Positions 55,426-59,806 of a stretch of 64,000 nt of DNA are shown here, piece after piece. Source of the DNA: Lepidodermella squamata (Eukaryota > Animalia > Gastrotricha); contig JBLDXI010000021.1 in assembly GCA_047495785.1 (NCBI GenBank), positions 1,674,001-1,738,000 on the forward strand. Direction: 5' to 3'. The first letter of the stretch is position 1. Each line of letters begins with the position of its first letter. The translations under genes were made by a program, and so were the position numbers. The notes under the pieces were generated by a model. That model searched no databases and was not told where the DNA came from. It worked only from the letters and a program-made list of their open reading frames with translations.

Positions 55426-58400
55426 TCATACGCGCGGACCGTTGGAAACTGCCGGTTCCACGTGACCATTACTGTCTTTGCGTTTCATATCACTTGTGCT
55501 TTTGCTGTTTTCGCTCGATTTCATCAGCAAATATTGGGAAGAGGAAGGCCGATGTTGTGGGCTGTTTGAAATGTTGTTGTTGTTGTTTTCTTCGGGTTGC
55601 GATTGCTGCAGAGACCTTGATTCCGGTATTTCACATAAAAAGACTTCGGCATTGCGCGTGTTACACGCCCCTGCCGCTACAACAAAACCGGGTGCGGAAG
55701 AAGTCGACGGTTCCCGACTAATATGACTCAGACTAGATCCTGCAGCTGTTATCTGAGCAGGATGGGAAGGCTGGCGAGACAGGTTAGGCTGCGTGGAAGA
55801 CGTCTCCACCTGCAACGGCTTTCGAGTTCCCGAGTTTGACCTTGTCAGCCGAACTTTCACTCGAGAAACCATTTGATTCACTCGCGCTCGAAATCGAGCT
55901 AAACGACTGGGTGTTGGCGGACCTGATCCGCCTTCAGCTTCAGCAATAGGTAAAAGATCACTGGAAGGAGTGTTATTTGGCCCAAAAACGTTCAGTTCCT
56001 CAAAAACACCAGTTTCGATCATCTGATTTAACAAATATAGCGAATAAATATTGACATTAATATGAATAAAATATAATTAAACCAACCTCTTGTTGCCAGG
56101 GAATTGAAATAGCACCGGTGGAAAACTGATCCCAAAATTCGCGATCAGCTTTCTCCAAGGCAACTCCTTTCGCCGTACTAAACTGCTCTATGTCCAATAC
56201 GTCCTTGCAATAGACAGCTCGATTCTATTAAGCAAAAACGATATACATAGGGATTACATGGGATTAGCTATTAGCTGACGTGATACGTACATCAGGTATA
56301 AAAGGCGGCTCGACCATTCGTGCCTCTAGACGCCGGAAATTGAGGGAAGAGAATATAGGATGTGCTTTGACGGCTTCGGCGTCCTCGGATGAGCATCCCA
56401 ATCGTTCAGATACATTTTTGACCAAGAGCTTTTCGCAGAAATCGCGCGCAATCGCTGTAAACCGGGGTGAATATACTTCTTTATCTTCTTTCACACGCCG
56501 CTCAACTTCTTCACGCCGAACGCGCTCCTTCGGACGCCGGAACGGCGACCTGCCATCAATCATGTCGAAAAAGACACATCCAAGGCCCCACCAATCGGGG
56601 CTGAAACTGTAAGGTACGCCAGCAATAACCTCTGGCGCCATATATCCGACAGTGCCAACTTTTCCAGTGGGCAGTTTTCCCTCTTGTATCTCTATTGCAA
56701 GACCTAGATCGGATATTCTGATGTGGCCATAGTCATCGAGCAGAATGTTATCAGGCTTGAGATCTCTGAAAACAATCCTTAGTCGATGAAGATGCTGAAG
56801 ACCACAGGTTATCTCAGCTGAAAAGAATCAATCAATCAATCAAATTACTCCCAACTGAAAATAATTTCTAACACTTACCAGCATAGAAAATAGCTCTCTC
56901 CATTGAAAGACCGGGATTTCCTAATACGTGGATATGGAATTTGAGATCGCCACCATTCATCAGACTAAGGACCAGGCAGACTTCGTCTTTAGCCTGGAAA
57001 GCGTAAGCAAGACTGACCTGTAAACAACTTGACAATAAGAAAATTATTGTGTGAAAAGGGATAGCTTACGATAAAATGAGAATTGACCTTCTCCAATATA
57101 TTTTTTTCGTTAAGAGCCATGCGCTCCCCTCGCCGTTTCTTTATCCGTTTCTTCTCCATTCTTTTTAAGGCATACATTCGACCAGTCAGACGCGATTGGC
57201 AAGCGCACACTTCTCCAAATCCACCCTTTCCCAGAACGCGGTACAACCGGAAGTTGTCCAAACCGACAGGTTTTCTTTCCAAATATTTCCACTGCAAGTA
57301 GCGATAGAAATACATGCTCTCCAAAAACGCCGGGAATGCATGTCTTTTCAGCGCATCTTTCGCAAATCTATACGTTATTGGGTTAAATGTCATGATTAAT
57401 TATTATTAAATAAAATCACTTGACAGATTGGCCAAAAAGATCTTTCTCTGTGGACAAAGAATGCTGGCGAGACGACTTGACTTGTTCTTCAACTGTAGCG
57501 CAATGATCTTCAGACATGTCCAACAACTCGGGCTGCGAATACATTCGACGGTGAATATGAGATTCAACATTTGTCTTCATACCTTTTGAGTGAAATATTT
57601 TTGCATTATTTCGCATGCAGCTTCGAGTCGCTTTTCGTCAACTGCCACTTCATATCGTTCCAAGTCCTCCAAAAACTCCAGAAGTGCTTGAAATTTTGGT
57701 TCTGCAGAGCAAAATTGTTTGAATAGTGCTTTCCCGATCGGTTGCTTTTCCACGATGAAATCATAATCGGTGTCTTAATTCAGAATAAAAATGCTGATTT
57801 ATAGTGCGATGGGAAAAATTATGATTTACTTATTTGACTGATCAAATCCACGGTTTTAGCTAAGCACATAGACAAAAAACCATGCGTAGCATTCATAGAT
57901 TTTTCTAGTGCTTTCGACACCATCAATCGGCCGTTGTTATCGGAGAAGCTAGAGAAAAGAGGAACCTCGCCACTCTTCAGACGTATAATAAATGAAATGT
58001 ATAGTAATAATTCACTAATACTTCGGTACAAAAACAAGCTCAAACGTGATAGCATACTCGAGAATAATATCGGCGTGAGGCAGGGCGACCCAATTTCGCC
58101 TTTATTATTTTGTCTCTTCATTGATGATTTACTACCACAGCTAGCTGAGACATCAGCAGGTCTCTCACTTTTTTCATTATCTGTTATATGTCTATTATAT
58201 GCGGACGACCTTGTTTTATTAGCGAAATCGCCGCAGGAGCTACAAAATCTGCTGAATGCAGTGGAAAAATTTGCTAGAGAAAATGGTCTGAAAATCAACG
58301 TAGAAAAGACAAAGGTCATGTGTTTTCACCGCGGCAGTACTTATACCCCCGCTGACTTCGAATTTAAAATAAATGGTACTAAAATTGAGCAAGTCTCTGA

Positions 58401-59806
58401 ATTTAAATATCTGGGCATTCTACTCACCCACAATCTGAGTTTTCGACGATGCTCCGAAAGCGCAACAGCCAAGGTCAAACGAATAATTTCGCAACTACCA
58501 GAAATGCTGAGACCCTACAAAAATTATTTTCCAGCCAATACATACAGAGTTTTATACAACTCGTACGCGATCAGTCATATGACGTTTGGAGCAGGCCTAT
58601 GGGGCTTCAAGCTTCGCAGCTCCATGCCTCAGATAAATTTATTATTTTCAAAAACAGTTCTTAACCTACCGAGTAGTGCGAGGAACGAGTTGGTGCTCCG
58701 AGAATACTATATCGAGCCACCATTTATAACTCTATTGATAACAGCCTTAAAATATTATTTTTCCATTAAATTTCGAACTAATAACGCTTTATTGCAAGAT
58801 AGCTTCAAAGTACTCGAGAATAATGACAGACTTTGCCGTCACGTGTATAAAAATCTCAAAGTTGAAATCGCCAAGGACAATTTTGAACGCATGTTTGACG
58901 CCTCTGAAAACGAGGTCGCACAAATCATTGATGAATACAAGAATTTTCTTATCTCAAAAGACAAAAACAAAATCTTGGGAAACCTAACCGCTTTCTATTG
59001 CAACCAAAACCTATACTGCGATAAGCTTTTTTCTCGGTGGTCCGAATATTTTGAGATTTTTGACATTAAAGACTCCCAAACCCTAGCCAAAATTCGAACA
59101 AACTCCCTATTTAAACCTTTTCAATACGTCATGGGCGAACTAAAATGCATCTATTGTAACGTGCAATCCCTTGAACCTCTCAATCTTCTACTCCATCTTA
59201 TCCTTCACTGTCCTGAAACTAATCATTGTACTTCTAACTTTAGAGATAAAATCAATCATGTTAACCTTCTAATAACTGCATTTCGTGATTGCAATAGCCA
59301 AAACGACTTGAACCTATCCTCCATTTTGAAATTAGCTCTTAAATGGCGAAATGATTACAAAAACTATGTATATCCTAAGTGAATCTCAACTTTATCTCGC
59401 TATGACGCTCTCGTATACCTCTGTGAACCTCTCTTTTGGAGTCGATTACTTCGAAGTAGAATTATATGTTTTTGTGAAATTCCACTTATCTATTAATTGT
59501 AATTATATATACTTATACCATATGTTAATATAGAATACCTTTGTTTTTCCCCGTTCCACAAAAAATGTAAAGAAACTACAATTGTAAATATGCTTGGTGC
59601 CCTCGGGCTGGCAGAAGAAAAAACTTGAACGGATTTTTGAATAAAACAAGAAAATTGAAAATTGAATTGATCAAATCCTGACACTCGGAAATATGAGGAA
59701 ATCTCAACAATTCTTTCCATTTCTTGCTCCTTCCACGATATTTGTCATGTTCCCCTTGGCGAGCCTTCAGATAAACAGTATTAGCAACGATATTCTCAAG
59801 CTCCAT
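55426..59806 (-). CDS. G protein-coupled receptor kinase, GRK4/5/6 subfamily; first coding exon interrupted by a LINE
   Basis: [33 protein letters not shown] domain, [54 protein letters not shown]. Confidence 0.93.
57850..59667 (+). mobile_element. 5'-truncated non-LTR retrotransposon (RT ORF 57850-59382, RTE-X-like), flanked by the 11-bp TSD TGATCAAATCC at 57839-57849 and 59668-59678
   Basis: Uninterrupted frame with [35 protein letters not shown] and a C-terminal CxxC...H...C; 3' end has AATAAA followed by an (ATTGAA)n-like tail; exact TSD. Confidence 0.93.

What the first reader, a model, noticed from the sequence alone, without database searches (positions are those of the whole stretch)
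57839..59678. Young LINE inserted inside the first coding exon of a GRK4/5/6 gene
Seen: the 1818-bp element is flanked by the exact TSD TGATCAAATCC. Removing it plus one TSD copy restores ...[26 protein letters not shown] through the native 56-nt intron 57774-57829, so the insertion is exonic, not intronic. Unspliced read-through stops at 59576 after 76 aa. The RT frame has no stops and the rest of GRK is intact, implying a very recent event from an active family, possibly a heterozygous null allele.
Basis: partly seen in the sequence, partly recalled or inferred. Interest (0 to 1): 0.8.

Follow-up and report, generated by a model that had tools for sequence, protein, structure and literature searches.

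The report
Young LINE breaks a GRK exon
A very recent, truncated jumping gene (LINE) sits inside the first protein-coding exon of this animal's only GRK4/5/6-type receptor kinase gene and cuts the protein off after 46 native residues; this is a clean but ordinary case of insertional gene knock-out, probably carried on one of two chromosome copies.

Summary
An 1818-bp, 5'-truncated non-LTR retrotransposon (57850-59667, + strand) is flanked by an exact 11-bp target-site duplication. It lies antisense inside coding exon 1 of a minus-strand GRK4/5/6 gene.

- **The empty site:** taking out the element and one duplicate gives a 716-codon, 8-exon gene. All introns are GT-AG and 50-66 nt long. The N-terminal spacing matches 118 of 126 homologues.
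- **As assembled:** the frame stops after 76 residues.
- **Age:** the copy has one private substitution and one homopolymer indel, both in its 3' UTR.
- **Copy number:** the locus is single copy in this assembly. I found no empty-site haplotig, no second GRK4/5/6 gene, and no full-length copy of this LINE subfamily.
- **Source:** assembly size, contig count and GC fit the published primary assembly of one Lepidodermella squamata individual with 2.99% heterozygosity. A haplotype-specific null allele is therefore the most likely reading, but this is inferred, not shown.

No reads or same-species transcripts could be reached, so zygosity and possible cryptic splicing remain untested. The scan noted this same stretch before (s1-384473, the intron-birth idea). 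This is a new member of a known kind, of modest interest.

The parts
57839..57849 (+). Target-site duplication, copy at the element's 5' end. On the minus strand it is part of GRK exon 1.
   Evidence: Exact 11-mer found only twice in the window.
57850..59667 (+). 5'-truncated non-LTR (LINE) retrotransposon, 1818 bp, antisense to the GRK gene.
   Evidence: RVT_1 E=4e-32. 99.72% identical to the copy at G000:C42:1700779-1702591. No terminal repeats other than the TSD.
57850..59382 (+). Open RT / C-terminal-domain frame of the element: 510 codons plus the stop at 59380-59382. It starts inside the RT domain, at Pfam RVT_1 profile position 62.
   Evidence: No private change against the other young copies in this part.
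59383..59667 (+). Element 3' UTR, ending in a short (A)nTTG(A) repeat tail at 59650-59667.
   Evidence: All young copies share the sequence up to ...GAAAATTGAA and then differ in the number of A-rich TTG repeats. The only private changes of this copy lie here, at 59530 and 59559.
59668..59678 (+). Target-site duplication, copy at the element's 3' end. On the minus strand it encodes part of Q-D-L-I.
59668..59806 (-). GRK exon 1, upstream part: ATG at 59806, 46 native codons.
   Evidence: tblastn to GRK4/5/6 homologues, 67-73% identity. Single copy in the genome.
59576..59806 (-). Read-through ORF of the interrupted allele: 46 native plus 30 element-antisense residues, then TAG.
57830..57838 (-). 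GRK exon 1, last 9 nt downstream of the insertion (GTCAAATAA, phase-1 end).
57774..57829 (-). Native intron 1, 56 nt, GTAAAT...AAG.
   Evidence: The frame is restored across it.
57583..57773 (-). GRK exon 2 (start of the RGS-homology domain).
   Evidence: Pfam RGS E=1.2e-9, profile positions 3-60.
57420..57532 (-). GRK exon 3.
   Evidence: Splice sites and frame read. It aligns to the RH-domain middle of homologues by eye. There was no tblastn HSP, no blastp hit at E<=1e-3 and no Pfam hit.
57070..57367 (-). GRK exon 4 (end of the RH domain, kinase N-lobe).
   Evidence: Pkinase profile 3-60. 62-71% identity to homologues.
56879..57017 (-). GRK exon 5.
   Evidence: Pkinase profile 61-101.
56291..56817 (-). 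GRK exon 6 (catalytic core).
   Evidence: Pkinase profile 107-262, E=3.7e-36. Best solved-structure matches are GRK4, GRK5 and GRK6, E about 1e-71.
56087..56224 (-). GRK exon 7 (AGC C-tail).
   Evidence: tblastn; sequence.
55426..56022 (-). GRK exon 8: 198 codons plus stop. Begins with a conserved [15 protein letters not shown] stretch, then a basic stretch and a long low-complexity tail.

Best explanation
A LINE of the type that carries an apurinic/apyrimidinic-like (APE) endonuclease inserted by target-primed reverse transcription into coding exon 1 of the animal's single GRK4/5/6 orthologue. Reverse transcription stopped early, leaving the 3' 1.8 kb of an element whose full length I estimate, unmeasured, at 4.5-5 kb, flanked by an 8-11 bp target-site duplication. 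As assembled, the allele encodes 46 native residues plus 30 junk residues and then stops, upstream of seven introns. It is therefore a null allele. That the transcript is degraded by nonsense-mediated decay is inferred. The event is extremely recent: the copy has at most one private substitution in 1818 bp, and the host gene shows no decay. Inferred, not shown: the insertion sits on only one of the two diverged haplotypes of the sequenced individual, and the primary assembly happened to pick that haplotype.
For: The exact 11-bp TSD occurs only at the two ends. The element's 3' end coincides with the family's common terminus, and the tail repeats vary between copies. Its 5' end lies inside the RT domain. 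Full-length relatives carry ORF1 plus an ORF2 with APE and RT domains, and homologues elsewhere carry the Exo_endo_phos and RVT_1 Pfam domains. The copy is 99.72% identical to the C42 copy and 99.2-99.4% to the C23 and C20 copies. Only one substitution and one A-run indel are private to it, both in the 3' UTR. The excised model gives 716 codons, GT-AG introns of 50-66 nt and a contiguous kinase profile. The FPH-to-QPIG spacing is then 28 residues, as in 118 of 126 homologues. Exon 6 is closest to GRK4/5/6 structures. Both flanks and the N-terminal exon are single copy in the 121-Mb assembly. Assembly size, contig count and GC fit the published L. squamata primary assembly: one individual, hifiasm, heterozygosity 2.99%, and only 72% of read k-mers present in the primary assembly (PMC11660948).
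Against: No read, alternative-haplotype or transcript data could be reached, so hemizygosity and loss of function at the RNA level are inferences. In-frame cryptic splice combinations exist. No full-length source copy of this subfamily was found. The DNA behind the probable source assembly was amplified by multiple displacement amplification (MDA), which can create chimeras. Such chimeras do not produce TSD-flanked elements ending at the family's canonical 3' end.
Confidence: 0.8

Rival explanations
1. The insertion is homozygous or fixed in the cultured lineage. The GRK4/5/6 gene has just been lost and is an incipient pseudogene, with the GRK2/3-type paralogue covering part of its function.
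For: Only the filled site exists in the assembly. A GRK2/3-type gene, whose closest full-length homologue has RGS, kinase and PH domains, is present on C9. From my own knowledge, GRK4/5/6-class knock-outs are viable in C. elegans, Drosophila and mouse.
Against: The element has at most one private substitution, against the 2.99% divergence between haplotypes reported for the probable source individual. A null allele of a conserved single-copy gene is unlikely to have become homozygous that fast. The gene shows no other lesion.
Confidence: 0.17
2. Intron birth: cryptic splice sites remove the element from the pre-mRNA and leave a near-normal GRK. The closest option uses the donor AGT|GTCAGG after 59683 and the acceptor ...GTGCTTAG|CTA resuming at 57859. 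It replaces CQ with SKTV.
For: Several in-frame GT...AG combinations exist. The acceptor lies in a pyrimidine-rich stretch. This gene's native donors are degenerate, for example GTGATT and GTTGGT.
Against: About one third of GT/AG pairs are in frame by chance, and the antisense frame of the element's 5' end happens to be open for 166 codons. The candidate donor has C at +3, a base seen in none of the 7 native donors. The new intron would be about 1.8 kb, against 50-66 nt for all native introns. The product would have 30 residues between FPH and QPIG, a spacing seen in 1 of 126 homologues. There are no RNA data.
Confidence: 0.06
3. Assembly or MDA chimera: the LINE was joined into the GRK locus artificially.
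For: The probable source DNA was MDA-amplified, and the paper discusses chimeric reads.
Against: A chimera would not duplicate exactly 11 bp of the target at both ends. It would not end at the family's canonical 3' terminus with a copy-specific tail, and it would not differ from every other copy by private changes. The paper reports about 83x HiFi coverage and no chimeric contig.
Confidence: 0.02

Closest known systems
De novo exonic LINE-1 insertions that cause loss-of-function alleles (for example L1 in human F8 exon 14; from my own knowledge, not checked here)
   Same: Insertion by target-primed reverse transcription, 5' truncation, a short TSD, disruption of a coding exon, and a premature stop.
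   Different: This is a different LINE lineage in a gastrotrich. The tail is (A)nTTG(A) repeats rather than poly(A). The element is antisense to the gene. The phenotype and zygosity are unknown.
APE-type two-ORF LINEs of invertebrates
   Same: Full-length relatives in this genome have a coiled-coil ORF1 and an ORF2 with APE and RT domains. The C-terminal region has a Cys-x2-Cys...His-x4-Cys motif, and the 3' ends carry short tandem repeats.
   Different: The best public protein match is only 34-36% identical. The clade (CR1, L2, Jockey, I and so on) was not determined, because no reference set was available.
GRK4/5/6 subfamily of G-protein-coupled receptor kinases
   Same: The N-terminal [10 protein letters not shown] motif, the RH domain, the AGC kinase domain and the basic C-terminal stretch are present. 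The best solved-structure matches are GRK4, GRK5 and GRK6.
   Different: The last exon is long (198 residues) with a low-complexity tail. The allele in the assembly is interrupted.
Transposon-derived intron gain ('introners'; from my own knowledge)
   Same: A TE with a TSD inside an exon, and possible co-option of splice sites near the TSD.
   Different: Introners are mostly DNA-transposon-like, short and multi-copy within genes. Here there is one LINE fragment, weak cryptic sites and no RNA evidence.

Membership tests
Non-LTR (LINE) retrotransposon | Reverse transcriptase domain of the LINE type | tested here: met
   RVT_1 E=4e-32 in this copy, and 7.6e-43 in the longer C42 copy. The nearest solved structures are R2 and LINE-1 ORF2p reverse transcriptases.
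Non-LTR (LINE) retrotransposon | Endonuclease (APE or RLE) in the full-length element | tested here: inconclusive
   It is absent from this truncated copy, and no full-length copy of the subfamily was found. A 70%-identical full-length relative (L042) has weak, below-cutoff Exo_endo_phos matches at the ORF2 N-terminus. Many public homologues carry PF03372 and PF14529.
Non-LTR (LINE) retrotransposon | Target-site duplication, variable 5' truncation, a fixed 3' end with a repeat tail, and no LTRs | tested here: met
   The TSD here is 11 bp, and the C23 copy has 7-10 bp. Copies of 0.4-2.2 kb share one 3' end. There are no terminal repeats.
GRK4/5/6 subfamily | Conserved N-terminal helix motif followed by an RH domain and an AGC kinase domain | tested here: met
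GRK4/5/6 subfamily | Closer to GRK4/5/6 than to GRK1/7 or GRK2/3, and no PH domain | tested here: met
   Exon 6 scores E about 1e-71 against GRK4/5/6, 1e-51 against GRK1 and 1e-41 against GRK2/3. No PH domain was found in exon 7 or exon 8.
Spliceosomal intron created by TE insertion | mRNA junctions showing removal of the element | not testable with these tools
   No same-species transcript could be retrieved.

The most novel reading that the evidence does not exclude
The LINE fragment is being removed from the GRK pre-mRNA through cryptic sites next to the TSD (donor after 59683, acceptor before 57859). That would be a new 1.8-kb intron caught at birth in a genome whose introns are otherwise about 50-66 nt.
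Probability: 0.06. Interest if true: 0.6.

Novelty: new member of a known kind. Interest (0 to 1): 0.3.

Why it matters
The finding shows that at least one LINE lineage has been mobile very recently in this probable gastrotrich genome. It also shows that the reference assembly carries a broken allele of a conserved signalling kinase, which will mislead gene annotation and orthologue or BUSCO-type surveys. If hemizygous, it is a natural heterozygous knock-out in a clonally cultured animal. It is also a convenient PCR-sized marker (about 0.3 kb empty against 2.1 kb filled) for haplotype and lineage tracking. Mechanistically it is standard LINE insertional mutagenesis.

Tried and rejected
1. **Empty-site or second copy in the assembly.** DNA searches with both flanks and a protein search with exon 1 each found only this locus.
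2. **Same-species transcripts or genomic ORFs in the public protein collection.**
   - The 76-aa read-through ORF as query gave best hits of 54-77% identity, from other species.
   - An exact look-up of the exon-4 ORF was not on record.
   - A profile of a flatworm GRK aligned with the exons, each given by reference, listed no same-species protein.
3. **Metagenome scan with exon 2.** It found nothing.
4. **Representative search with exon 4.** It supplied full-length GRK homologues for exon mapping but nothing from this species.
5. **Full-length source element.** The region upstream of the C42 copy matched only 74% relatives and an unrelated 135-bp repeat.
6. **Rfam on the window.** No hit.
7. 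**First MAFFT alignment (A1).** It misplaced exons 2, 3 and 8 and was dropped.

**Left out on purpose.** The joined 716-aa model was sent to no search tool. Exons 1 and 2 were joined only inside a script, to check the frame. The hypothetical empty-site junction string has no reference, so it was not searched in the collections. I did not build a splice-site weight matrix, because only 7 verified introns were available. The LINE clade was not assigned for lack of reference sequences, and no consensus of the element was built.

Full report
**1. Observation**

The 11-mer TGATCAAATCC occurs exactly twice in the window, at 57839-57849 and 59668-59678. Dinucleotide-preserving shuffles expect 0.09 occurrences, and none of 100 shuffles reached two.

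The 1818 bp between the two copies (57850-59667) hold an open frame of 510 codons on the + strand, 57850-59379, with the stop at 59380-59382. Its product matches Pfam RVT_1 at E=4e-32, but only from profile position 62 onward. The element is therefore truncated at its 5' end, inside the reverse transcriptase. No other terminal repeats are present.

**2. The host gene**

On the minus strand an ATG at 59806 opens [46 protein letters not shown]. Full-length GRK homologues were obtained with a representative search on exon 4 and aligned by tblastn to the window. Together with the sequence they define the exons in the table.

| Exon | Window coordinates (minus strand) |
|---|---|
| 1 | 59806-59668, continued by 57838-57830 |
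| 2 | 57773-57583 |
| 3 | 57532-57420 |
| 4 | 57367-57070 |
| 5 | 57017-56879 |
| 6 | 56817-56291 |
| 7 | 56224-56087 |
| 8 | 56022-55429, stop at 55426-55428 |

- **Introns:** all seven begin with GT, end with AG, and are 50-66 nt long.
- **Length:** with the element and one duplicate removed, the exon lengths sum to 2148 nt, or 716 codons.
- **Domains:** the Pfam kinase profile runs without a gap across the exons, covering positions 3-60 (exon 4), 61-101 (exon 5) and 107-262 (exon 6). Exon 2 matches RGS.
- **Exon 3:** this exon was placed from the sequence and splice sites only. It drew no tblastn, blastp or Pfam match.
- **Subfamily:** exon 6 is far closer to solved GRK4, GRK5 and GRK6 (E about 1e-71) than to GRK1 (1e-51) or GRK2/3 (1e-41).
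- **Spacing:** the segment from FPH to QPIG is 28 residues in the excised model. That is the length found in 118 of 126 homologues fetched here.

The insertion is therefore exonic, and the site without the element is the ancestral state. As assembled, the frame runs 30 codons into the element's antisense strand and stops at 59576.

The joined 716-aa model was not sent to any search tool. Exons were always given one by one, by reference. Exons 1 and 2 were joined only inside a script, to check the frame.

**3. The element and its family**

The window is G000:C21:1674001-1738000, in a 121.2-Mb assembly of 151 contigs.

| Copy | Size | Identity to this copy | Note |
|---|---|---|---|
| C42 | about 2.2 kb | 99.72% (4 mismatches, 1 gap in 1814) | Extends about 410 nt further 5' but is still truncated |
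| C23 | 1.2 kb | 99.2% | Its own TSD of 7-10 bp, (TTG)TCAGTGG |
| C20, two copies | 0.9 and 0.4 kb | 99.4-99.7% | Share a flank, so they are one insertion later duplicated |
| C46, two copies | 0.6-0.7 kb aligned | 96% | Older |

All young copies share one 3' end...GAATAAAACAAGAAAATTGAA, followed by a copy-specific number of A-rich TTG(A) repeats. In this copy and in C23 the first bases of the TSD could equally belong to the tail. That fits priming by microhomology during target-primed reverse transcription, but this step is inferred.

More distant relatives (70-74% identical) include a full-length element on C59. It has a 277-aa coiled-coil ORF1 and a 1159-aa ORF2 with RVT_1 and weak, below-cutoff endonuclease matches. 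Public homologues are at most 34-36% identical, and many carry APE-type endonuclease domains. No full-length copy of the young subfamily was found, so "active family" is plausible but not shown.

**4. Age**

I aligned the young copies to each other. The only changes private to this copy are one substitution (59530) and one base missing from an A run (59559). Both lie in the 3' UTR, and the 1530-bp coding part has no private change. The open RT frame is therefore simply what such a young dead-on-arrival copy should look like. The host gene shows no second lesion.

**5. Zygosity and source**

Both flanks and the N-terminal exon are single copy in the assembly. It therefore contains no empty-site haplotig and no second GRK4/5/6 gene. 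A GRK2/3-type gene lies on C9.

Earlier notes of this scan name the gastrotrich Lepidodermella squamata as the probable organism. I checked this only indirectly. The published decontaminated assembly has 122.8 Mb, 157 contigs and 43.3% GC. This assembly has 121.2 Mb and 151 contigs, and the window has 43.0% GC.

That assembly is the hifiasm primary assembly of one MDA-amplified animal from a commercial culture. Its heterozygosity is 2.99%, and only 72% of read k-mers are present in the primary assembly (PMC11660948). The insertion has about 0.05% private divergence, so it is much younger than the split between the two haplotypes. It should therefore sit on one haplotype only. This is an inference: I could reach no reads, no alternative haplotype and no transcripts.

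**6. Rivals**

- **Artefact.** An MDA or assembly chimera would not create an exact TSD or end at the family's canonical terminus. It also would not carry private differences from every other copy. I give this about 2%.
- **Intron birth.** I listed all in-frame GT...AG combinations. The least disruptive one uses GTCAGG after 59683 and the acceptor before 57859, and swaps CQ for SKTV. Against it:
  - The donor has C at +3, unlike all seven native donors.
  - The intron would be about 1.8 kb in a gene whose introns are 50-66 nt.
  - The product would have a rare spacing, seen in 1 of 126 homologues.
  - Many in-frame pairs are expected by chance, because the antisense frame of the element's 5' part is open for 166 codons.

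  I give it about 6%.
- **Homozygous loss of the gene.** This remains possible, at about 17%.

**7. Verdict**

This is a real, very young, 5'-truncated LINE insertion that knocks out the assembled allele of the single GRK4/5/6 gene. It is a clean example of a well-known mechanism in a poorly studied phylum. It is useful for annotation and as a marker, but not mechanistically new.

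Noticed in passing
window 57819-58319 (minus strand): The antisense strand of the LINE's 5' part has a 166-codon ORF starting with ATG. It runs in frame into GRK exon 1b (...KTVDLISQI). After normal splicing of intron 1 it could in principle yield a GRK with a foreign N-terminus. It is probably a chance open frame.
   Followed up: partly
L021:5094-5229 (G000:C42, just 5' of the C42 LINE copy): A repeat of about 135 bp is present in at least 35 places of the genome at 93-99% identity. It looks like a SINE or MITE. ARAGORN finds no tRNA in it.
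   Followed up: partly
L004 (G000:C20:3258957-3262030) and L009 (C20:3223615-3227007): The C20 LINE copy abuts a dense array of eight tRNA genes. It occurs twice, 35 kb apart, with the same 5' flank, so the insertion was carried along by a segmental duplication of the tRNA-array region.
   Followed up: partly
L003:1475-1515 (G000:C23): The C23 copy has a short duplication of element sequence (about 25 nt, GCTCCGAAAGCGCAACAGCCAAGGTC) at its 5' junction. This may be a template-jump signature at the end of reverse transcription.
   Followed up: no
L027 (G000:C9:847160-850339): A GRK2/3-type paralogue. It is 55% identical in the kinase domain and 72% in the first 36 residues to a homologue that has RGS, kinase and PH domains.
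   Followed up: partly
window 61717-63534 (+): A 605-codon first exon of a PDS5 cohesin-regulator gene lies head to head with the GRK gene, about 1.9 kb from its ATG. The locus is ordinary gene-dense DNA, not a repeat graveyard.
   Followed up: partly
window 55429-56022 (minus strand): The last GRK exon encodes an unusually long tail of 198 residues, with an Asn run and Ser/Pro-rich low-complexity sequence after the conserved basic helix region.
   Followed up: no
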